Counted from the first letter of the stretch, positions 7,390-53,236 are shown. The stretch: 64,000 nucleotides of DNA from Lama guanicoe (GCA_013239625.1 MU057201.1:124001-188000), one strand, 5' to 3'. The notes: generated by a model from the sequence alone, not told the origin. A program made the numbers and translations.

Positions 7390-8720
<1,331 letters not shown>

Positions 8721-9009
8721 GGTCACCGAAGGAGCCCAGAATACCTAGTGTTCAGTGGTGAGGGCGAAACCTGCTTGGAAGCCCTTGGAGAGAGAAGGGC
8801 TAAGTGCTCTGGAGTAGAGAAGTAGGCCTGGTGCCCACCCTCCCTGTTGGCCATTCACTTGCACTTCCGAGTTCATTGGAGGACACTCGGCCTCTGGATG
8901 CCCCTTGTGTGAGGTTCTGTTGTGAACATATTTTTTTATTTATGCATCTCTCAGCCAGAGATTATTGGCACTCAGACTGCAGATGTGGTTACCTGCAACA
9001 TTAATGGGA

Positions 9010-13300: not shown

Positions 13301-15429
13301 TAAAAAAAAAAAAAAAACAATCCGAGCTTTCATGAGCTATTATGTTTTCTCTGGGAGATTTTATTTTATTTTGGGGGGAGGGGGTGATTAGGTTTATTTA
13401 CTTTATTTTTTTCTGGTACATTTTAAAATTTAAAGAAAGCTTTTAACACAAGTTTGGTCAAGGTCATGAGGAAATGAATATTCTCTCAGATTTTTAAACA
13501 ATATTTCAAACACTGTGATTACGCACGTCAAAACCTTATACATGTCTAATGCATTTTGTCCCAGAGGATCCGCTTCCAGAAGTTTGTCCTGTGGGTGGAA
13601 AACACGCCCCAGCATGCTGACCGTGCCAGGAACGCATTTCACGGGGAAGCAAGTTCAGCAACGGGTCTGTGGCCCTGAAATTCACCAGTCTCCCCGTGGG
13701 CCCAGCACTGAAAGCACCTGGCATGATGCTCTAGAAGGATACGGGAGGAGAGGGACCAAGAGTGGGTTCTGAGGGCCACTGGGAGGCAAGGAGACAGGAA
13801 GTGCTAAGGAGATGAGAATATATGGAGGAGGGGACAGAGCCAGAGGTCTGTTACTGGGTCCTGACTCTACAGCCATTGGTGAATTGTCTAATGAGGTCTT
13901 TTGACTGTTGATCCATTGGGAACTTATTTTCTTCTGACTAGAATGGCAGGACACGCATCTCTGACCAAACAGGTACCTGAGCCACAGAGATGTCTGTAGG
14001 TGTGAGAGTAGCAGGTGTGAGAGCCTAAGTGAGGAGAGCACTAGCATCAGAGACATAGAGCCAGATTACTCTGCAGTCCTAAGAACAAGACACTGGCCCA
14101 CATGGATGACTTACCCATTAGAGTCTGGCTGCTTCTTTGTAAGTCAAAGCTTAGAAGTGAGTTCTTCCAGAGTTGGACTTTTGGGGAAAGATGCTAACAA
14201 AGATCCAGAGGGCAGGATATTATTGGGGGCCTTGTCCAGCAATCAGTGAAGTGATGGATCTGGGAGCTTAATTCACATGGGGAGGGTAGATAAAGAAGAA
14301 TTGTTGATCTGAATCCTGTCCCAGAATTTGCCAAGTCTTGCCCCATGTGTTACTAAGCTGTCCCTCTGGAAATTAATTTCACCAATTTCATTTTGCTGTT
14401 CCTTCAGATTTCCTCTTGTAGAATTATGAGGCCATCTCTCTCAGCTACTGTTGGCTGCAGATGATATTCCAGGGTGAGCAGGGCAACATCATGAATTATA
14501 GCAAAACATAACCCAGTGACTATGTGGTTCACCTACCACAGTTGGGACCAGTAGAGTTCAACACACAAGGTAGTTATCCCTCTGAAATCTGCACATCCCT
14601 GATTGAACAGCTGTAAAAGTCATTTAGCAGATGGCCTCCTGAAAAGGGGAAGACTTCTAGCCTCAGACTGAATAATAATGAAGCTTGGTGTCCTTTCCAC
14701 ACAAGAGCTGAAGTGGGTTATCCTTCCCCTAGAAAAAGAGAAAACATAACCCTGCAGATGAGGGTGGGAACATGAAATGGGGGAGGGAATAAGAGAAGAG
14801 GTTCCTTATGCCTGAGTCATGAAACTAGAGAAGTGGAGTGGTGCGATTAACACATAAAGAGAAGAAACAAAAGAATCTGAAAATTCTGAAAAAGGTGGCT
14901 TGGAGCTTTTTGAATTCACTGCTGGGACCAATCCAGGGAGGCTACCATGCATTACTTTGTCCTCGGTTTTCCCTGACCTCCCCCAAGTGTCTGCAACCTG
15001 AACTGACTTGCCAAAATTCCAAGTACAAACCTTGGGTCCTTCACACACTGCCCAGCCCTGTACTATCCGATCCCAGAGCTCGCACGATTCCCCTGCGTCT
15101 CTGCCCTGATGTTTCTTCATGTCCGTATCTAATAGTGAAGAACTCACACTTACCTGTCAGGGTGGAAAGGGTAGAGCATGGAAGGCTTCCTGGAGGAGGA
15201 GACCATTGATCTAGGGCTGGGTAAAGTGGATAAGCAAGATTTCCAAAGTCTGAGATGACAGGAGACAAAGGAAAAGATACGTGCAAAGGCTTCAGAAGTA
15301 GAGCCAGGCGTTGTAAGATGGACATAGATGTACAAAGACATAACAGTAAGAGCAATGATTTCAGCGATTTCGCTGGGCCTTGAGAAATGGGCAATTTCCA
15401 GCAGGACACCTGGGGGAATGGACAACCCC

Positions 15430-16100
15430 GCCGTCAATCATTGCAGGCCCACCAATCACGATGGCGGGGGCGGGGCCGTAGGACGTCCGCGGCGCCCTAA
15501 CACGTCACTAAGCTCGCGACCCTGGACTGTACGGCGCGGCTTCCGTGGACCGTTCGTCCGCGTGATGAGGGGACATGGCGGCTCCCTTTCCAGTGACCTC
15601 AAAAGTGTAAGTTTCACTGATTTCACTTCGTAGTGGGCTGTCCGTCGTGTGATTCGGAGAGAATCGGGTAGCTGGTGTGTCCGGATACACTTCGGCAGAC
15701 GTGCGTCCCGGGCTCCTGGGCGGTTGGCGGAGAAGGCCTCCTAGCCGCGTTCGGCCGCAGAGCCGGGCTTTCTGTGCCAACGTGGTGAAACGTTCAGAAC
15801 CTGTTCTCTGCTTAAACGCGGGTCTTGGACCGCCCCCTCCCCCAGGTCGTGGGCTTAACGCTTTGTGGTGTTCGCGGCGTAAAGGGTGGAGAGGGCTGGC
15901 GCGGCTGGCCGGGTCGGGGTGAGGGTGGGTGTGGGTCCGGCCCAGCGCGGTGGCCGTTGGGCGCCGCGAGCCGCTTTTGCCTTTTGCTGCCCGGGGTCGT
16001 TGGGTGGATGGCGTCGCCGGGGGTTTCTCTGCGTCTTGGTCTTGGCCGTTTTCGCGAGATTTCTTACCAGTGACAGGCTGCCTTTGAGCGCGGTTTTGTG
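15430..16100 (+). promoter_or_regulatory. Orphan CpG-island promoter with candidate first exon (about 15530-15606)
   Basis: CCAAT 15452-15456, GC box 15467-15476, CACGTCA 15501-15507, CTCGCGA 15513-15519, ETS-like CTTCCG 15540-15545, YY1-type ACATGGCGGC 15573-15582, and donor GTAAGT 15607-15612. Confidence 0.75.
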
Positions 16101-16487
16101 TTTCACTTAACCACACGGCTTTAAGGTTAATAGCATTTGTTGGTTGAATTTCGGAATGGTCGTCTTCATGTGTTGCCTGAAAAAGAAAAACAATGATGAG
16201 AATTTCAACGTGAAAATGAGTAAACAGATGGCCTGGTCCTTAGTCCTGTTCCTCGGTTCCCTGCGGGTGCTGCGGTTACAGACACATTGGCTTTATTAGA
16301 ATGTCAGCTTTCAGAATAGCCTGATCTTGACAGTTTCCCATCAAAGTTTGGATCTGACTTTTTGTTGTGGTTGGAAACTCTTGCAGCGGCAGGCAGCAGC
16401 AAGGTGGCCTGGATGGGACTGTGGGAAATAGACTTCCAGGCTGTGGACACTGTGGAGCTCAGATGCCTCTTCCCCTAGAATGACAAC

Positions 16488-17253
16488 ATGGACCGGAAGG
16501 TAATTTAAAGCATTTCTATCTATGAAAAAGGGTAAAGATGGGACCTGTGGGCCACATGGGTGGTGGGAAATGGTGGCCTGCCAGAGCACGCCCACAGCAG
16601 CAGGGTGGACATTTCTCTGGGAGGGATCCTGGAAACACAGGATACAATGAAAGTAATGCAAAGGTCATTGCTTCTTCAGATGTTCACCCTGCGATGCGTT
16701 CTTGGCCATGCCTTTGCTTGCAGACTTGGCTGGGACCGCACATCCTGTTTGATCCACAGTCTGCAGTATCTGAGTCTTAAAGTTTCATAGCTCTTTCTCA
16801 CTATCTTCTTTGAGCTTCGGTTTTCTCTTTTGCACAGCAGGATTCATACCATGGTGTCATGGATGTTGTGAGAATCAAGTGTGATGACCTCCGTTAAGGG
16901 CTTAGCCCACAGGTGGTGCTCAAGGAATCCCGACCCCATTTCCTGAGTCCGCATATTGGAGCCGAACACGCTGGTATTTGGTGTAACTCTTCTTACCCCT
17001 GCTTCCCACTCTTACCCAAGCGCTTTAGCCTTTGGCATCTTATCATTGAAATGGTTGTTTCCTTTCTCAGGGCCAGCAGGCTACCTTAGAAGTTACTCAA
17101 GGGTCTCCTCGGAAAGCACACCTCTTTAATCCAGCTGTGAAGCAGCAGGGACGCCCAGGACGCCAGGCTTTTCCTTCCTCTCAGCAACGTTCTGCTCTGA
17201 TCAACTCGACACCTTACGCGGAGGCGGACGTGTGTCAACACCTGCACCTGTGA
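16488..17253 (+). CDS. Candidate spliced ETD-like microprotein ORF or degenerate ETD relic (exons 16488-16499 and 17071-17253, 64 aa)
   Basis: AACATGG start, donor AAG|GTAATT at 16500, acceptor ttgtttcctttctcag| at 17070, phase 0. Product is MDRK|GQQATLEVTQGSPRKAHLFNP...SALINSTPYAEADVCQHLHL*. EVTQGSPRK resembles ETD EVPKGSPRE; a second frame gives NVL and RHLTRRR, resembling ETD NVLIFLINRQLGRHR. Confidence 0.35.
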
Positions 17254-17760
17254 GGACTTTGTAGCACGTGAACCCTTGCAGGCAGAGGGTGCCTGTAGCC
17301 TGGCAGTGCCAGAAAGGTCTTCACTTCTTTCCTTTTCTGTATAAATCACTTCTTTTCTGTGTGGTGTTGAATTTATCGAATTCCGGTGAAGACATTTGGT
17401 CATTCAAAGGGGCGCTTGTAGCAGGGGTTGGGCGTTAAACAGAAACATGCACTGTTCTGAAGTGTTCTCAAAGAGGCTTGTAACCCTCAGTCTCAGCAGC
17501 TAACTCTGGTTCCTCTACTTGCCTATTGGTACCAGTTTCAACCAGAACCTGGCATCATAGAAGCTGAAGTTCAGCCACCCAAGTTCAAAGTGCACGTTTC
17601 TTTATTGAGGAGAAGTGAGAGTGCCTAGGCTCTTCCCAGCACATGGGCATCTCCTGCTCTTTTGGTTTATCCCTGTAATGGGTTAAATTACTTTAAATCC
17701 TTGGAAGATGGGGGTCATGGTTCATTTCTCACTTAGTGAAAAACTGAAACAGATACTGTC

Positions 17761-18352
17761 TTTTTTCCTGCCTCAGGTTTATTTGTACAAACAGCACAGG
17801 TAGACATGAGCCCCATGCAGACAGTAGCCCAGGGGTCACACTAGTCCTTCTATCCTCACATCAATAGATGGAAGCCTCTACTGTGGAGCCTTTATGGCGG
17901 CCTGTGCGCCTTTGAGAGACTGAGTCTGAGCTGGAGCTGCGGCTGTGGCCTTGGTCTGAGCCTTGTCCTTGGCCTTTGGCCCTCAGAGCCTGAGACCCTT
18001 GGCGACGCGGGCACGAGCACGTTTCCCGAGCTTGGGGTGAGCAATGCAGGCAAGTCAGCTGAGCTCGCAGCTGCCGCCCTGTGGGATCTTAGGCTTGACC
18101 TCCTTGGGCTTTCTGAGAGCCTTGACAGCTTCAGCACGTGCACTCACGGCCTTGGCGTTGTTGGCCTGCATCTGCTTCAGGCCCTTGTGCTTCTTGGCAA
18201 AGTGCATGTTCCTCAGGAGCTTGGGGTCCACCCCCTTAAGAGATTTGTATTGTTGTGATCGGGGTTTTTTGATACCGTTTCTGTGCCATTTTCGGGGATG
18301 GTTGTGTATGGTGTGGATCTTCGACTTGGCCATGCTTGCACCAGAGCCGGGG
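17761..18352 (-). pseudogene. RPL29: RPL29 processed pseudogene
   Basis: [49 protein letters not shown] from ATG 18331-18333, intronless. Premature TGA at 18055-18057 plus a second TGA; native TAG at 17878-17880; AATAAA at 17778-17783; short A tail; degenerate TSD ctgaaaca..tactgt at 17744-17760 and 18353-18370. Confidence 0.95.
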
Positions 18353-21300
18353 CTGAAACATGTACTGTTCAGGAGAGGCTTTATCCTGACCCGTGTTCCT
18401 TCAGCAAGAGACATGACGGTGACCACACCTGGCTCATTTCCTAGTCAAAGCAGTTGTGAAACTGCCCAGTAACCATGGCGCCTCCACTTCCTTCCACACA
18501 GATTTGTGCCCGCTGCCGTCTGCGGTCTTCCTGAGTCTTCTCACTGGAGGGCCTAAATGCATTTTTTTCATTTTCATTTTCATTTTCATTTTGTAGCACC
18601 TCTATTGTGGTGCGGTTCCTGTACAGTAAAGTGCACATATTTCACATGTACGATGCGATGGGTCTTGCTAGATGTATCCACCGGAAATGAACTGTTTGGT
18701 GGGCGATTCTGCTGAGTATTAGCGTGTAGGAAGCGGTCACAAGGCAGGGCATCCCTAAGGGGCTTTTTCTGATTGGTGGCAACCGCAGGAATTGGGACCC
18801 TTGAGGAGGGAGGAGGTGATACTACCGAAGCTCATGCTGGGATGCTGGCTGCTTAGTTCTTTGCCCGGGAGCGCATTCCTAGGCCTGCCTTGTCCTGAGG
18901 CATGTGCTCCACCAGCGTTTTCCGCGTGTGTGGGAATGGTCATGTACCGTTGAGTTTTTAAGTGCGGTCTCCCCCGTCAGGCTCATGTTTGCCTTAGCTA
19001 TTTCTTCATGCCCCTTGTTTCTGTGGGTGACAGGAACAGAATGGGTAATAGTGGACACTCGAAGGCAAGGCCTTTTGAAATGAGGTGTCTTCCCTGTTGT
19101 GCTGATTCCCTGTTACATGCAGACAGTAGTTGACTTGCGACAGCAGCAGGCATTTTGAGAGGCTCGTTAGCCCACTGGAAATGACTCGTTAGCCCACTGG
19201 AAGTGGTGGTGGTGGTAGCCATGATGGTGGCTGTGGCAGTGAGGGTGCTGATTAAGAAAAAAAGCCACAGCTGTCACTGGTAGAAAGCTGAATAGAATGG
19301 AGACCTGTCCTTAGTTCTTTTCATTGGTTTATTACCGAATCGTCTCAAACCGTGTGGTTTAAAGACTGGTAGGGTCTCTGTTTCCCAGAGAACAGTCACG
19401 GTGTGCAGAATGGATTTTGCCGTGGTAACAGAGCCAACAAAACTGTATAGGGTGCATCATAGCCAGGTTTAACGGGTCCTGTATCTTGTGGTATTAATCA
19501 CTAAGCTGCGAGAAGCCTTCTTAAGTAACATTTTCTTGCATGAGAAACCAGCGGTTACCCACACCTCCGTGTGCTCCCCCTTTCTGCTGAGCGTGGTTAT
19601 CCCGAGGTCGCACAGTGTGTTTTTGCAGTAGGAGCCATAAGTGGTTGTGATAATGTCATAAAAGTTGGGAGAATACATCTTGAACCAAATGGCTTTCATG
19701 GCTGAGTTGCCGGCCACCATGATTGTCGGTTCTTTTTGAGAGAAAATGACAGAGGGTAGAGGGCCAGACAAGGGCCGGAGCGTCCTGATCAGGAAAGATG
19801 GAATACCTAGAGAATAGGGTCCCTCCTTCAGAGGCCTGCAGCCTGCAGGTGGGGAGAGGACCGGGGACAGCAGCACTGGAAAGAGCTGCTCGTAGAGACC
19901 GAGGGCAAGGGACTGGGGTGTGAAAGTTATGAGAAGCATCGGTGTTCAAATAAGTGTCTTCTGCCCCTTCCGCATCCCTGGTGCTGCCTGGGACCGGCAC
20001 AGCACGGGGACCAGGGTGTCAGTGCACGTGGCTGAGTGCGCCACGAGAACGCACGGCCTTGTGGCAAAGAGGAGACTTTCGTGCTGGGGGGCTGCTCCTG
20101 ATTTTCTAGCATCCTTGAGGCTTTTGGACTTTGCTGCTAGGGAAGTTCTTGTGCTTGTGCCTCATGCCGTGCCCTGCCTTAGGCTGGGGAAAGTGGCTTA
20201 GGAAAGGTGGGCCTTCGCCCTCCTACGCTGGGGCCTAGCACGGTCCTCCGAGGGAGTCTCCTGGGAGGCACCTGATGACACTGATGTTGAACGTGGTGAA
20301 TGATCCCACTTGGGCGAGCTGACCGCCCAGCGTCTCATGTTGCTTCTGAGCTGTGCTCCTCGGAGAGGCTAATGAGAGTGAGCTGCTGTTGCTGGTGTGT
20401 TCTGATACTCTGGCCAGACAGCTCTCCTGTCGACACTCCTATGGCTCGGATGCCTTGTTGAAGTCCTGCCCAGGGCACACACCGGCCACGGCTGCGTGGG
20501 GGGCGTGGGACGTGTTGGGTCTGGGGGAAGAAGTTGCCCGTGGCCGGTTGTCGGGCCTCGGTGCTGATCCAAAGGAGCTGAACAGAAGCAGACCCAGGCT
20601 GCAGGGCAGTGGCGAGTTGGGGGTCCTTAAGATTTCCACTTGCATTTGTGTGGATGTGGTTGGAGCGTGTCTGTGTTCGCCGTCTGCCCGCTTCCGCTGA
20701 GACACTCTGCACGTGGGTTGGAAGAAAGGCCCCGTGGGGGGTCCCGTAAGTGGACAGTGCATGAAACTGGGGCGTTGGGATCCTCGGGGACAGGTGCGGA
20801 TGAGCCTGGATGTCCAGGGACCTCCCGGGTCAGGTGTCCGGGCTGGAGGAGGAAGCCCTCCTATGCTTCTTGCTGAAGAGGGCACCCCCCCCAGGCCGTG
20901 GCTGTCCCGTCCCCTGTTTATGTGCTGGGAAGCATTGCTGCTTGGTGGTCTGGCCCCTCTGCCATTTTGGTCTCCCTGTTGGGGTAGCTGACCCTCCCTC
21001 AAGGGGACCTTGTCTGCACTGTCAAGGAAGAGGCAGTGCTCAGCAGCATTGAGAATTCGTGCATTGTGCGTGACACTGGGCTACCGGAGGGGTGGCAGGG
21101 GACGGGGGTTGCACTTTGAGGAGGGAGGGGTGCTGTGATTTCCCCTTTTTGGGCTCTTGATTTCTCTTGATTTGTCAAATCTGGGTCGGCACGTAAGTGG
21201 TCCAGCAGGGATCTGTGGAGGGTCAGCAAGTATGAGAGCGACCATGGGGCGGACAAGGGGCTTTGGTGTGAAAGTTTTGGTGGGCGTTAGTGGTGGCAGG

Positions 21301-36330: not shown

Positions 36331-36564
36331 CTAAATGTGTACCTGCAGGCGGACGTTGAGAATCANNNNNNNNNNNNNNNNNNNNNNNNNNNNNNNNNNN
36401 NNNNNNNNNNNNNNNNNNNNNNNNNNNNNNNNNNNNNNNNNNNNNNNNNNNNNNNNNNNNNNNNNNNNNNNNNNNNNNNNNNNNNNNNNNNNNNNCAGCC
36501 GCACCGCCAGCCCGGACAGGGCCGCCGCCGCCGCCGCCGTCATCGATCTGGTGTAGCCTCCCAT
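36331..36564 (-). CDS. SMIM10: Small integral membrane protein 10, 77 aa, middle hidden by an N run
   Basis: [23 protein letters not shown][44 X][10 protein letters not shown] matches recalled human SMIM10 (..[20 protein letters not shown]...ILNVHLQVYI). Upstream in-frame PEASGSRHC matches human MEALGSGHY, which separates it from SMIM10L2A/B. Confidence 0.9.
   Translation of the reverse strand: [77 protein letters not shown]
36366..36495. other. 130-nt N gap inside the SMIM10 CDS
   Basis: Run of N. Confidence 1.
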
Positions 36565-37774
36565 GCAGTGCCTAGAGCCCGAGGCTTCCGGCCGGCTTCC
36601 CAGAACCGACCGACGGATAGAGGGACGGATGCGGGAGAACCGGTGCGGGAGGCGGGTCGCGCGGCTGCAGATGCCAGCGGCGCTGCACGGCGGGTACCCT
36701 CCTCCTCCTGCAGCGCTCGGGCCGCCGCGGTCGCTGGTGGCCCGCTGGGAACGCGGGGCTGGGACGCCTCGGGGCCGCGCGGGGCGGGGCCGGGCGGGGC
36801 GCCAGGGATCCGGAGCCCAGGGTAGTGCAGTTTCCCCGGGAGACCTAGCTTCCTGACCCCGGTGGTCTTTCTTTTTTTTTTAATTTTTAAACTTTAACGG
36901 AAGCAAAACGAAACTTGCTCAAAACGTTAGAGATTTTCCTTCATAAGCACGATCTTGAGTAGCTTAGAAAACGTAAATGCATTTCCTCTTGCCTCAAATC
37001 CCTTTAGGAATTTTTTCAATCCTCAATTGTGAGCTAGTACAAATACACCAAACCTACTAATTTTCTGAACGTGTGTGCATTCTGGTTTAATCATGCAAGC
37101 GACTTTATTGTTTTTGTTTTTGCTTTAGATCTTTAGTATTCTGCTAATGAGAAAAGTTATACAAACAAGTTTTCAGAAATTGTCAACATCACATTTAGAA
37201 CAATGGAAGGCAAATTCCCTTGGCAGCTTCCCCGCCCCGCCCCCGCCATGAACTAAGATTATGTTTCCTGTATATACTTCCAGACGCGATATGTTGATAG
37301 AGTGCTTTTACCATGTCAATAATATACGACTACCTAACTCTCTTTGATGACGGATTATTACACCAATATATATGACGAATAATGCTCAGTAATTCAGTTA
37401 GCAAGTCCCCTGTTGATGGACATTCTGAATGCTTCTCGTTTTTCTTAAGCCAAAAATTGCTGCAGTGAATATCGTACACATTAATTTGCAAGTGGCAGAA
37501 GAGTACGAATAATGCCCCACCTTTATGTATAAACACAATCATGTAAGTGTAGATATTTAGTGTTTGAGGTCATAAAGTTTTACTAATATATGTGGTCGAT
37601 CAAAGAAGTTTAGAGACCAGGTTTCTATACAACATTGAGTGTTAATCTTGGAATTTTTTCCTTCAGTATGATACTCAGTAATTCCATTTCATTTTTCTTC
37701 TAATCTGCATTCATTTAATTATCAGTGAAGCTGAGCAACTTTTCTAAATTTCTTTTTAATATTGTTGTACTGAT

Positions 37775-51148: not shown

Positions 51149-53236
51149 TTTTTTTATTTTTTAGAGCAAACAATTCCAAAACTTATATGAAACCATAAAA
51201 GACCCTGAATTGCCAAAGGAATCTTTTGTAGGTCTGTTTTTCTCTCTTTCTTCTTTCTTTCTATTCTCTTTTCTTATGGTTGATAACTAGAGAAGTTCCT
51301 TTAACATTTATTGTAAAGCTGGTTTGGTGGTGCTGAAATCTTTTAGCTTTTGTTTATCTGTGAAGCTTTTGATTTCTCCATCAAATCTGAATGAGAGCCT
51401 TGCTGGATAGAGTATTCTTGGTTGTAAGTTTTACCCTTTCATCACTTTAAATATATCGTGCCACTCCCTTCTGGCCTGTAGACTTTCTGCTGAAAAATCA
51501 GCTGAAAACCTTATGGGAGTTTCCTTGTATGTTATTTGTTGTCTTTCTCTTGCTGATTTTAATATTTTCTCCTTATCCTTAATTGTTGTCAATTTGATGA
51601 CTATGTGCCTTGCTGTGCTCCTCTTTGGGTTGATCCTGAGTGGAACTCTCTGTGGTTCCTGGACTTGGGTGACTGTTTCCTTTCCCAAGTTGGGAAAGTT
51701 TTCAGTGATTATCTCTTCAAAAATTTTCTCAGGTCCTTTTTCTCTCTCTTCTCTTTCTGGGACCCCTATGATGCAAATATTAGTAAGTTTCATGTTGTCC
51801 CAGAGTTCTCTTAAACTATCCTCATTTCTTTTCATTCTTTTTTCTTTTTTCTGTTCTGAAGTAGTGATTTCCTCTAATCTGTCTTCTAGCTCACTGATCA
51901 GTTCTTCTGCCTCATTTAGTCTGTTCTTGGTTCCTTCTACTGTGTTATTCATTTCAGTGATTGTATTCTTCAACTCTGTTTGGGCATTCTTTATATTTCC
52001 CAACTCTTTGCTAAAAACTTTACTCTGAGCATCTATACTCCTCTTGAGTTCTCTGAACATCTTTGCCATCATTACTTTAAACTCTTTCTCAGATAAATTG
52101 CCTATCTCCTCATCACTTATTTTTTCTTCTGGGATTTTATCTTGTGACTTGGCCTGGAATTCTGCCGCCTCATATCGTCTATCTTTCTATTTGTATTTTT
52201 AGGTAGGTTCATTACATTTCTCGACCTTGGAGAGGTGAGGGACGTCTTATGCGTCCCAGCAGTACACTCCTCTCTCATCACCCAAGGGTCAGGGTCCAAC
52301 TGGTCCCAATGTAGAGTCTGGCCTGTATTTGTGGATTCCTTCCACAGGCTTTGGGATTATTGTTTTCTTATTTCTAGTATCTGCCCCCTGGTGGATGAGG
52401 CTGGACTAGAGGCTTGTGCAGGTTTCCTGGCAGGAGGAGCCAGTGCCTGCCCACTGCTGGGTGGAGCTTGGTCATGGACCTCTGGTGGGTAGGGCCACGT
52501 CTAGAGGCCTCTGTGGCTCAGGAAGTCTGCTGATGGATGTGGCTATGTTCCCACCCTGTATGTTGTTTGGCCTGAGGATTCCCTACAGGCTGCTGGGTGG
52601 GGCTAGGTCTTGGTGCTAATGATCCAATCAAGATGTCAGCCTCCAGGAAAGCTCATGTACATGAACATTCCCAGAATGTCCGCCACCAGCCTTTATGTCC
52701 CCTGGGTGAGCCACAGCCGTACCCTACCTCCGCAGGAGACCTTCCAAAACCAGCAGGCAGGCCTGGCCCAGGTTCCTATGAGATCACTGCGTCTGCTGTT
52801 CGACCTGGCACACTTGAGATTCTGTGTACGCTTCCCAAGAGAATGAAGTCTGTTTCCCCCAGTCCTGTGGGGCTTCTGGAGTTAAGTCCCATTGGCCTTC
52901 AAAACCAGATGTCCTGGGGTCTCCTCCTCCCCCCAATGCCAGAACCCTGGGCTGGGGAGCCTGACGTGGGGCTTAGAGCTCTCACCCCTGTGGGAGGGCC
53001 TCTGTGACTTAACTATTCTTCAGCTTGTGTGTTGCCCACTCGGGGATCTGGGGCCTGATTATATCGCGAGCACGCCCCTCCTACCATCCTACTGTGGTTC
53101 CCTCTTTATGTTTCCAGTTGAAGAAGATCCTTTTTGCTGGGTTTCAATCTGTTTTTTTTTCCTGTGGTTGTTTAGCAGTCAGTTGTGATTTTGCTGTAGT
53201 CACGAGGAGAGGCGAGCTCGTGGGCCCTACTACTCC
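51149..53236 (-). mobile_element. L1-derived insertion: 5' UTR + ORF1 + short inverted ORF2 fragment + poly(A), flanked by an 18-bp TSD
   Basis: ORF1p motifs (LRELWDNMKLTNICIIGVPE, RINPKRSTARHIVIKL, ITYKETPIRFSADFS). TSD caagactca(a/c)gtaattct at 51131-51148 and 53237-53254. T tract at 51149-51162. Confidence 0.9.
51287..52173 (-). pseudogene. Disrupted L1 ORF1 (RNA-binding protein)
   Basis: Likely ATG at 52171-52173, an early frameshift, an open segment at 51431-52072, premature TAA codons, and the native-position TAG at 51287-51289 after KPALQ*MLKELL. Confidence 0.85.

What the first reader, a model, noticed from the sequence alone, without database searches (positions are those of the whole stretch)
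15430..17253. Orphan CpG-island gene with a spliced ETD-like microprotein ORF that the ORF track cannot show
Seen: a complete promoter motif set, a first-exon donor at 15607, then a Kozak-context ATG at 16488 only 12 nt before donor AAG|GTAATT. Joining it in phase 0 to a strong acceptor at 17070 gives 64 aa: MDRK|GQQATLEVTQGSPRKAHLFNPAVKQQGRPGRQAFPSSQQRSALINSTPYAEADVCQHLHL. Recalled knowledge: human ETDA/B/C are about 59-aa testis microproteins (MDKEVPKGSPREPALN...NVLIFLINRQLGRHRSD...) encoded in this same Xq26.3 neighbourhood. EVTQGSPRK and LIN fall in the open frame, while NVL (17186) and RHLTRRR (17207) fall in another frame containing TGA at 17198-17200. Inference: an extra ETD-family locus between RTL8 and SMIM10 that is either frameshifted into a new C-terminus or decayed into a lncRNA.
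Basis: partly seen in the sequence, partly recalled or inferred. Interest (0 to 1): 0.8.

Follow-up and report, generated by a model that had tools for sequence, protein, structure and literature searches.

The report
CpG-island transcript with unconserved small ORF

Summary

The CpG island is real (67 CpG, observed/expected 1.05 against a background of 0.18). RNA runs from several studies hold about a quarter of the stretch.

The ORF looks neither special nor conserved:
- An open frame this long appears in 14-35% of shuffles.
- Five ATGs precede its start in the three-exon model.
- Its only relatives among 1.8 billion proteins are three unnamed read-through ORFs from host DNA in metagenomes.
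- Against those relatives the camel frame carries two compensating frameshifts, near 17152 and 17207.
- In a 6.2-kb orthologous contig (L001) the acceptor AG is lost and the frame is broken.
- Identity there is flat at about 72% across exons, intron and flanks, with no third-position excess.

Only the ATG-GAY-CNG-AAG|GTAATT segment looks locally conserved.

ETD homology could not be tested. No ETD reference sequence was obtainable, and no antisense partner copy was found.

Most likely this is a transcribed lncRNA or pseudogene relic. Interest is low.

The parts
15301..16100 (.). CpG island (core 15430-16050)
   Evidence: GC 0.61-0.65, 67-75 CpG, o/e 1.02-1.05 against a background of 0.18. No copy elsewhere in the window.
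15432..15507 (+). TATA-less promoter-like motif cluster: CGTCA 15432, CCAAT 15452, ATGGCGG 15461, GGGCGG 15468, GACGTC 15482, CGTCA 15503
   Evidence: Regex scan. These are consensus matches only. The transcription start was not mapped.
15500..15606 (+). Putative exon 1 (5' end unknown), ending at donor AGT|GTAAGT. Holds ATG 15565 and ATG 15575; the latter lies in context ggggacATGG, inside a YY1-like core.
   Evidence: The exon is inferred, not shown by reads.
16387..16499 (+). Putative exon 2, with a weak acceptor at 16386.
   Evidence: Identity to L001 is 64.6%, no higher than the intron.
16480..16510 (+). Locally conserved segment: ATGACAAYATG-GAY-CNG-AAG|GTAATT (four-codon start plus donor)
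   Evidence: The alignment with L001 shows ATG, AAG and GTAATT all kept. The 60-nt windows here score 78-80%, against 72% overall.
17071..17365 (+). Putative terminal exon, from acceptor ...tttctcag|G to about 20 nt past a TATAAA hexamer
   Evidence: Acceptor in the top 1% of AG sites. TATAAA at 17340 is the only poly(A)-signal-like hexamer before 17758, and a GT-rich run follows it. The 3' end is inferred.
17071..17253 (+).
   Evidence: The only hit among 1.84 billion representatives is P0001 (E=3.9e-4, 43% identity, end to end, same stop).
17153..17206 (+). Middle third of the ORF, read out of the frame shared by the relatives. Flanked by +1 nt near 17152 and -1 nt near 17207-8. The shared frame has TGA at 17198-200.
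   Evidence: Frameshift-aware alignment, stable for frameshift penalties of 6-14. Scores are 133-168 against a null of 28±4.
17340..17345 (+). TATAAA, a possible weak poly(A) signal
   Evidence: Not conserved in L001, which has ATTAAG at that place.

Best explanation
The locus is a CpG-island-promoted transcription unit on the + strand, at about 15.5-17.4 kb. It probably has three short exons and is expressed in camelid tissues, including reproductive tract samples.

Its RNA is most likely non-coding. The terminal exon is old sequence shared with other even-toed ungulates. It may be the relic of a small ETD-type gene. It now drifts neutrally and gains different frameshifts and stops in each lineage.

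The 64-codon frame is a by-product of three things: a conserved splice donor that happens to follow an ATG, a strong camel-lineage acceptor, and two indels that cancel each other.

- **Shown:** the CpG island, partial presence in RNA, non-conservation of the frame, flat nucleotide identity, and no coding-type substitution pattern.
- **Inferred:** the exon boundaries, the 3' end, and the non-coding function.
For: - **Island.** CpG o/e 1.05 against a background of 0.18.
- **RNA.** Fourteen runs listed as RNA hold 0.20-0.28 of the sampled words of 15430-17400. Five of them are on record as RNA, and the rest are guessed to be RNA. DNA-like runs hold 0.9. The three-exon model predicts about 0.26 (inference).
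- **Relatives.** Only unnamed ORFs from short ENA and Logan contigs turned up: P0001/P0002 (with a ruminant-type SINE read-through), P0003 and P0004.
- **Frame.** Relative to P0001 and P0003 the camel has +1 nt at about 17152 and -1 nt at about 17207, with a TGA in the shared frame. P0004/L001 breaks the frame after '...AALDS', and L001 has TAG where P0003 has W.
- **Acceptor.** The acceptor CAG|G is CTG|G in L001.
- **Identity to L001.** Exon 2 65%, intron 70%, ORF 72%, 3'UTR 69%, downstream 73%.
- **Substitutions by codon position.** 7/9/7 and 4/4/2. Changed codons are 4 synonymous against 16 non-synonymous, the same as in control frames.
- **Translation context.** Five ATGs lie upstream of ATG 16488 in the model. 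One of them opens a 42-codon ORF in strong context that ends 5 nt before it.
- **ORF length.** Expected in 14-35% of shuffles.
- **Family scans.** No Pfam, ESM Atlas or Rfam match.
Against: - The ATG, its four codons and the donor are kept in L001.
- The two camel indels restore the original downstream frame and stop. That pattern is also what selection for an ORF would produce, although chance gives it roughly one time in seven (my estimate).
- The ORF is open to the same stop in three of the four versions. This is biased, because only open frames enter protein databases.
- No other camelid was compared, so constraint within camelids is untested.
- Junctions and strand of the RNA were not seen.
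- An unmethylated-looking CpG island argues that the locus is alive, but it says nothing about coding.
Confidence: 0.6

Rival explanations
1. It is a functional, camelid-specific microprotein gene. An ETD-type small gene lost its original start and frame, then was rescued by a spliced-in ATG (MDRK) and two compensating frameshifts. The result is a 64-aa protein with a new middle segment.
For: - Strong Kozak context at 16488; top-percentile donor and acceptor.
- ATG and donor are conserved in L001.
- The compensating +1/-1 indels keep the old C-terminal frame and stop.
- RNA is present in reproductive-system runs.
Against: - Five upstream ATGs, including a strong one.
- No constraint detectable against other lineages.
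- ORF length is within chance.
- No protein of this sequence is on record in 5.8 or 1.8 billion-protein collections.
- Low 'recognition' by the protein language model.
Confidence: 0.1
2. The exon model is wrong. The CpG island serves another transcript: an unspliced promoter-associated RNA, a divergent or longer gene with exons outside 15.4-17.4 kb, or an enhancer-like element. The RNA words found would then come from different pieces than the three proposed exons.
For: - No junction was observed.
- The acceptor for exon 2 is weak, and stronger unused acceptors exist at 16837/16840.
- The poly(A) hexamer is a weak variant and is not conserved.
- No sequence demonstrably homologous to the island, and no CpG-rich DNA, lies in the roughly 400 bp of L001 upstream of the equivalent of 16076.
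Against: - The share of words held by RNA runs (0.20-0.28) matches the length of the three exons.
- Donor 16500 and acceptor 17070 are among the best sites in the region.
Confidence: 0.2
3. The coding product is a different small ORF of the same transcript. Candidates are the 42-codon ORF from ATG 15575, or a roughly 20-codon peptide from ATG 16488 joined to the alternative acceptor at 17089 (frame 2). In that frame, camel and L001 both stop at the same place.
For: - ATG 15575 has G at -3 and G at +4, and is the second ATG in the model.
- By eye, the frame-2 reading after position 17090 has a stop at the same position in camel and in L001.
Against: - ATG 15575 lies inside a YY1-like ATGGCGG core, so it may be a promoter element.
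- Exon 2 is the least conserved segment, at 65%.
- Acceptor 17089 scores poorly in camel.
- Nothing was tested beyond inspection.
Confidence: 0.05

Closest known systems
ETD family (human ETDA/ETDB/ETDC, mouse Etd) and its antisense ETD-like paralogues (Q3ZM62 / ENSG00000293661 family, including SMIM10L2B-AS1)
   Same: - X-linked neighbourhood: an RTL8 gene and an SMIM10-family ORF are in the window, and one human ETD-like paralogue bears the name SMIM10L2B-AS1 (PMC12679747).
- Small size, about 60 codons.
- Expression in reproductive tissue is reported for some human members, and some RNA runs that hold this stretch are labelled reproductive system.
- Frequent decay of copies (frameshifts, lost starts, premature stops) is described for primate members in the same paper.
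   Different: - Human ETD genes are described as single-exon, each with a downstream antisense paralogue.
- Here the exon has no ATG and carries an in-frame stop at 17047-49 just upstream, so a spliced start is needed.
- No second copy is detectable on either strand in the window or in L001.
- The frame is broken or shifted in at least two of the four versions compared.
- No sequence comparison with a reference ETD protein could be run.
Transcribed unitary pseudogenes, and lncRNAs that carry relics of former coding exons
   Same: An active CpG-island promoter and spliced-looking exons, with an old ORF that drifts neutrally and gains lineage-specific frameshifts and stops.
   Different: The former coding status of the ancestor is itself not shown here. 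It rests on the untested ETD resemblance, and on two lineages (P0001, P0003) sharing one continuous frame.
Chance or de novo small ORFs in lncRNAs
   Same: ORF length within the chance range, upstream ATGs, and no family or structure match.
   Different: The sequence is not young. It aligns with DNA of other ungulate lineages at about 72% identity, and part of the frame is shared.

Membership tests
ETD family (ETDA/B/C, Etd) | Significant sequence similarity to reference ETD proteins | not testable with these tools
   - No ETD sequence was returned by any tool.
- Pfam, the ESM Atlas, the word search and HMMER against 1.84 billion representatives gave no named relative.
- The resemblance is recalled, not tested.
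ETD family (ETDA/B/C, Etd) | Single-exon ORF of about 59 codons with its own ATG | tested here: not met
   There is no ATG in the frame between the stop at 17047-49 and 17253. The ORF needs an ATG spliced in from 16488. The single-exon description comes from PMC12679747.
ETD family (ETDA/B/C, Etd) | Downstream antisense ETD-like paralogue (tail-to-tail pair) | tested here: not met
   tblastn with all three camel frames and with P0001-P0003 found no second copy in the window or in L001. All hits had E>0.2. A highly decayed copy, or one outside the window, would be missed. The preprint notes that the mouse pair is not antisense either.
ETD family (ETDA/B/C, Etd) | X-linked position in the RTL8 / SMIM10(L2) / ZNF75D neighbourhood | tested here: inconclusive
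   RTL8 (DUF4939, E=5e-52) lies at 8.1-8.5 kb. An SMIM10-family ORF lies at 36.3-36.6 kb (weak hit to PF15118, which I take for the SMIM10 family from recollection; E=0.015; the middle is masked). Whether that ORF is SMIM10 or SMIM10L2 cannot be told. Chromosome identity was not tested.
ETD family (ETDA/B/C, Etd) | Reading frame conserved across placental mammals | tested here: not met
   The camel is shifted at about 17152 and about 17207, with TGA in the shared frame. L001/P0004 has a frameshift plus TAG. There is no third-position excess.
Protein-coding microprotein gene (generic) | Purifying selection on the ORF relative to flanking DNA | tested here: not met
   Identity is 72% in the ORF, against 70% in the intron and 73% downstream. 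Changed codons are 4 synonymous against 16 non-synonymous, as in control frames. Only one distant species was compared at the DNA level, and no camelid.
Protein-coding microprotein gene (generic) | Start codon reachable by scanning ribosomes | tested here: inconclusive
   In the three-exon model, five ATGs precede ATG 16488. The real transcription start and exon use are unknown.
Spliced polyadenylated lncRNA from a CpG-island promoter | CpG island, transcription, splice junctions, no conserved ORF | tested here: inconclusive
   The island is shown. Partial RNA presence is shown. The lack of a conserved ORF is shown. Junctions and strand were not observed.

The most novel reading that the evidence does not exclude
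Camelids have kept alive a decaying ETD-type gene. A new spliced start codon and two compensating frameshifts would then give a translated 64-aa protein, with a lineage-specific middle segment, expressed in reproductive tissue. This would be a documented case of microprotein 'rescue by frameshift pair'.
Probability: 0.07. Interest if true: 0.55.

Novelty: new member of a known kind. Interest (0 to 1): 0.2.

Why it matters
If the microprotein reading were right, this would be a clean example of a tiny X-linked reproductive gene rebuilt by splicing and paired frameshifts. It would also extend the poorly understood ETD family outside primates and rodents.

As the evidence stands, the value is mostly practical. 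A convincing-looking spliced small ORF behind a real CpG island can still be a neutral by-product. Host DNA hidden in metagenome assemblies was enough to show that here.

The locus is still worth annotating in camelids as an apparently live, unannotated transcription unit next to RTL8.

Tried and rejected
**Searches with no result**
1. Pfam on the exon-3 ORF, on P0001 and P0003, and on the frame-2 tail: nothing.
2. Word search with the 60-aa piece: no candidate.
3. ESM Atlas with the 60-aa piece and with P0003: no usable hit.
4. Rfam on 14800-17750: nothing.
5. Search for a second ETD-like copy in the window and in L001, on both strands: only chance-level hits.
6. Self-comparison of 15000-17750 against the window: no duplicate.
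7. Literature search for ETD sequence or gene structure: only PMC12679747 and its preprint were useful. Neither holds sequences or supplements as text.

**Ideas dropped**
10. I thought the CpG island had decayed by CpG>TpG in L001. Forced alignment upstream of 16076 is only 41-44% identical, and CpG fates are not enriched for TG/CA. I rejected this as unsupported.

11. Alignment with ETDA/B/C, mouse Etd or Q3ZM62.
12. Any database search with the joined 64-aa model. The exons were searched separately by reference. They were concatenated only inside a local script, to list upstream ATGs.

Full report
**What is in the sequence**

Reading 15200-17500 confirms each coordinate in the finding.
- A GC- and CpG-rich block runs from about 15300 to 16100. 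The core 15430-16050 has GC 64.7%, 67 CpG and observed/expected 1.05. The 25-36 kb background has o/e 0.18.
- At its 5' edge lie CCAAT (15452), a GC box (15468), two ATGGCGG cores (15461, 15575) and CGTCA/GACGTC sites. There is no TATA box.
- AGT|GTAAGT is at 15607.
- ATG 16488 (gacaacATGG) is followed by GAC CGG AAG and GTAATT.
- The AG at 17069-70 follows a clean pyrimidine run.
- The frame from 17071 is open for 60 codons to TGA at 17251-53.
- Frame +1 contains NVL (17186), TGA (17198-200) and RHLTRRR (17207).
- On a rough position matrix built from general knowledge, donor 16500 and acceptor 17070 are in the top 1% of GT/AG sites in the window, and donor 15607 in the top 3%. The acceptor I would need for exon 2 (16386) is weak, and stronger acceptors exist at 16837/16840.

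**Is it more than chance?**

The CpG island is. The ORF is not. A stop-free run of 60 or more codons from the exon start occurs in 13.6% of dinucleotide-preserving shuffles in a given frame and in 35% in any frame. The + strand of the window holds 160 such runs.

**Surroundings**

- An RTL8 gene lies at 8072-8527 on the minus strand (DUF4939, E=5e-52).
- An RPL29 processed pseudogene lies at about 17850-18430 on the minus strand (Ribosomal_L29e, E=1e-19).
- An SMIM10-family ORF lies at 36331-36564 on the minus strand. Its middle is masked with N, which I did not try to fill. Its last 11 residues hit PF15118 weakly.
- So 'between RTL8 and SMIM10' holds.
- The locus has no duplicate in the window and no Rfam match.

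**Expression**

- Fourteen runs listed as RNA, spread over several studies, hold 0.20-0.28 of the sampled 31-mers of 15430-17400. Five are on record as RNA, from 'reproductive system' samples; the others are guessed to be RNA.
- Runs that look like genomic DNA of 'organism B' hold about 0.9.
- A three-exon transcript (about 100 + 113 + about 295 nt, ending some 20 nt after TATAAA at 17340) would be about 0.26 of the stretch. The number fits, but that is inference.
- No splice junction, strand or RNA end was therefore observed.

- One local BLAST on the closed script machine still used the whole window file as its database.
- From then on, scripts that used the whole window masked those places; the others used only segments that exclude them.

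**Translation context**

I concatenated the three exons inside a local script only. In that model, ATG 16488 is the sixth ATG.
- ATG 15575 (ggggacATGG) opens a 42-codon ORF that ends 5 nt before ATG 16488.
- ATG 16480 opens an overlapping 12-codon ORF.
- ATG 15575 lies within a YY1-like core, so it may be a promoter element. If it is transcribed, it still stands in the way of scanning ribosomes.

**Relatives**

- Pfam, the word search and the ESM Atlas gave nothing for the 60-aa piece.
- HMMER against 1.84 billion representatives gave a single hit, P0001: 84 aa, E=3.9e-4, 43% identity, query 1-60 aligned to 25-84 without gaps, and the same C-terminus.
- Its cluster mate P0002 (140 aa) shows that the N-terminus is a read-through of what I recognise, from general knowledge, as a ruminant Bov-tA-type SINE. 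It runs straight into 'FLSQ|GQQ', which is the unspliced acceptor.
- Word searches from P0001 and P0003 added only P0003 (106 aa, ENA) and P0004 (69 aa, Logan).
- None carries a name or a Pfam domain. All come from contigs of 0.5-1.3 kb. I read them as host DNA in metagenome or run assemblies, where a gene caller took the longest open frame.

**The frame is not conserved**

- A frameshift-aware protein-to-DNA alignment shows that the ends of the camel ORF match P0001 and P0003 in frame 1. The middle (17153-17206) matches them in frame 2.
- The camel has +1 nt near 17152 and -1 nt near 17207-8. It also has TGA (17198-200) where the others have Cys or Trp.
- The result is the same for frameshift penalties of 6 to 14. 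Scores are 133-168, against 28±4 for shuffled DNA.
The 'open frame' is a mosaic.
- P0004 leaves the shared frame after '...AALDS' and stops four codons later.

**An orthologous contig**

- One scan of metagenome contigs returned L001, a 6.2-kb piece of a JGI contig.
- I do not take L001 for human. Its frame is 88% identical to P0003 and 68-70% to the ruminant P0001, but only about 40-57% to the camel. That places it nearer the ruminant than the camel is.
- L001 is colinear with window 16076-16238, 16236-17749 and 18380-20268.
- It has a 1.65-kb insertion at camel position 16236-8. It lacks the block 17750-18380, which in the camel holds most of the RPL29 retro-copy.
- In L001 the segment ATGACAAYATG-GAY-CNG-AAG|GTAATT is kept.
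- The acceptor CAG|G of 17070 is CTG|G in L001. The frame has the P0004 shift, plus TAG at the Trp of P0003. TATAAA is ATTAAG.
- Identity is flat: exon 2 64.6%, intron 70.4%, ORF 72.2%, 3'UTR 68.8%, downstream 73.3%, overall 71.8%.
- Differences by codon position are 7/9/7 in the N-terminal part and 4/4/2 in the C-terminal part. Changed codons are 4 synonymous against 16 non-synonymous, as in the two control frames.
- Upstream of 16076, homology cannot be demonstrated. The roughly 400 bp available in L001 are AT-rich and CpG-poor.
- So the island is either camel-lineage specific or lost in that lineage. I could not decide which.

**ETD**

- The only usable sources are PMC12679747 and its preprint.
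- They describe human ETDA/B/C and a pseudogene as single-exon X-linked genes.
- Each has a downstream antisense ETD-like paralogue (the Q3ZM62 family, about 40% identical to ETDA). One of these is SMIM10L2B-AS1.
- Orthologues of both families are said to exist throughout placental mammals. Several primate copies are decayed. Some members are testis-specific.
- This makes an ETD-type relic near an SMIM10-family gene plausible.
- By recollection, motifs in frame 1 and frame 2 resemble ETD in the right order. That is a lead, not a test.
- Two described features were tested and not met: single-exon structure, and the antisense partner.
- My estimate that the exon is an ETD-family relic is about 0.6, and it remains unverified.

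**Verdict**

The CpG island, and probably a transcript, are real. The claimed microprotein is not supported: length within chance, upstream ATGs, no conserved frame, the acceptor lost in another lineage, and neutral substitution pattern.

The best reading (0.6) is a transcribed lncRNA or pseudogene relic.

Three things keep a small probability (about 0.1) for a camelid-specific protein: the conserved ATG-plus-donor segment, the compensating pair of indels, and the lack of any camelid comparison.

Interest is low (0.2).

Noticed in passing
window 17750-18430 (-): RPL29 processed pseudogene (Ribosomal_L29e, E=1e-19), with a frameshifted C-terminal part. The block 17750-18380 has no counterpart in the orthologous contig L001, so it is a lineage-specific retro-insertion just 3' of the locus.
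   Followed up: partly
window 36331-36564 (-): SMIM10-family small ORF inside a CpG island (36501-36900). Its middle is masked with N. The C-terminal 11 residues hit PF15118 (DUF4560) at E=0.015. Whether it is SMIM10 or SMIM10L2 was not decided.
   Followed up: partly
window 8072-8527 (-): Intact RTL8-type ORF (151 aa; DUF4939, E=5e-52) within a 1.3-kb CpG island (7501-8800).
   Followed up: partly
window 51431-52072 (-): 213-aa ORF that looks like LINE-1 ORF1p by eye.
   Followed up: no
L001 571-2225: A 1.65-kb AT-rich insertion relative to the camel, at the equivalent of window 16236-16238 (inside the putative intron 1). No clear transposon ORF was seen.
   Followed up: partly
P0001 / P0002 (ENA contigs of 851 and 603 bp): In a ruminant version of the locus, a Bov-tA-type SINE sits directly upstream of the acceptor-equivalent. 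It is read through into the same frame, giving 84- and 140-aa database 'proteins' that are almost certainly gene-caller artefacts on host DNA.
   Followed up: partly
window 16480-16510 and L001 about 2470-2500: The short segment with two ATGs, the four-codon start and the GTAATT donor is better conserved than its surroundings (78-80% against 72%). This hints that the splice donor, not the ORF, is what is kept.
   Followed up: partly
window 17086-17403 (-): A 105-aa antisense ORF covers the whole terminal exon. It is longer than the sense ORF, which shows how easily open frames arise here.
   Followed up: no
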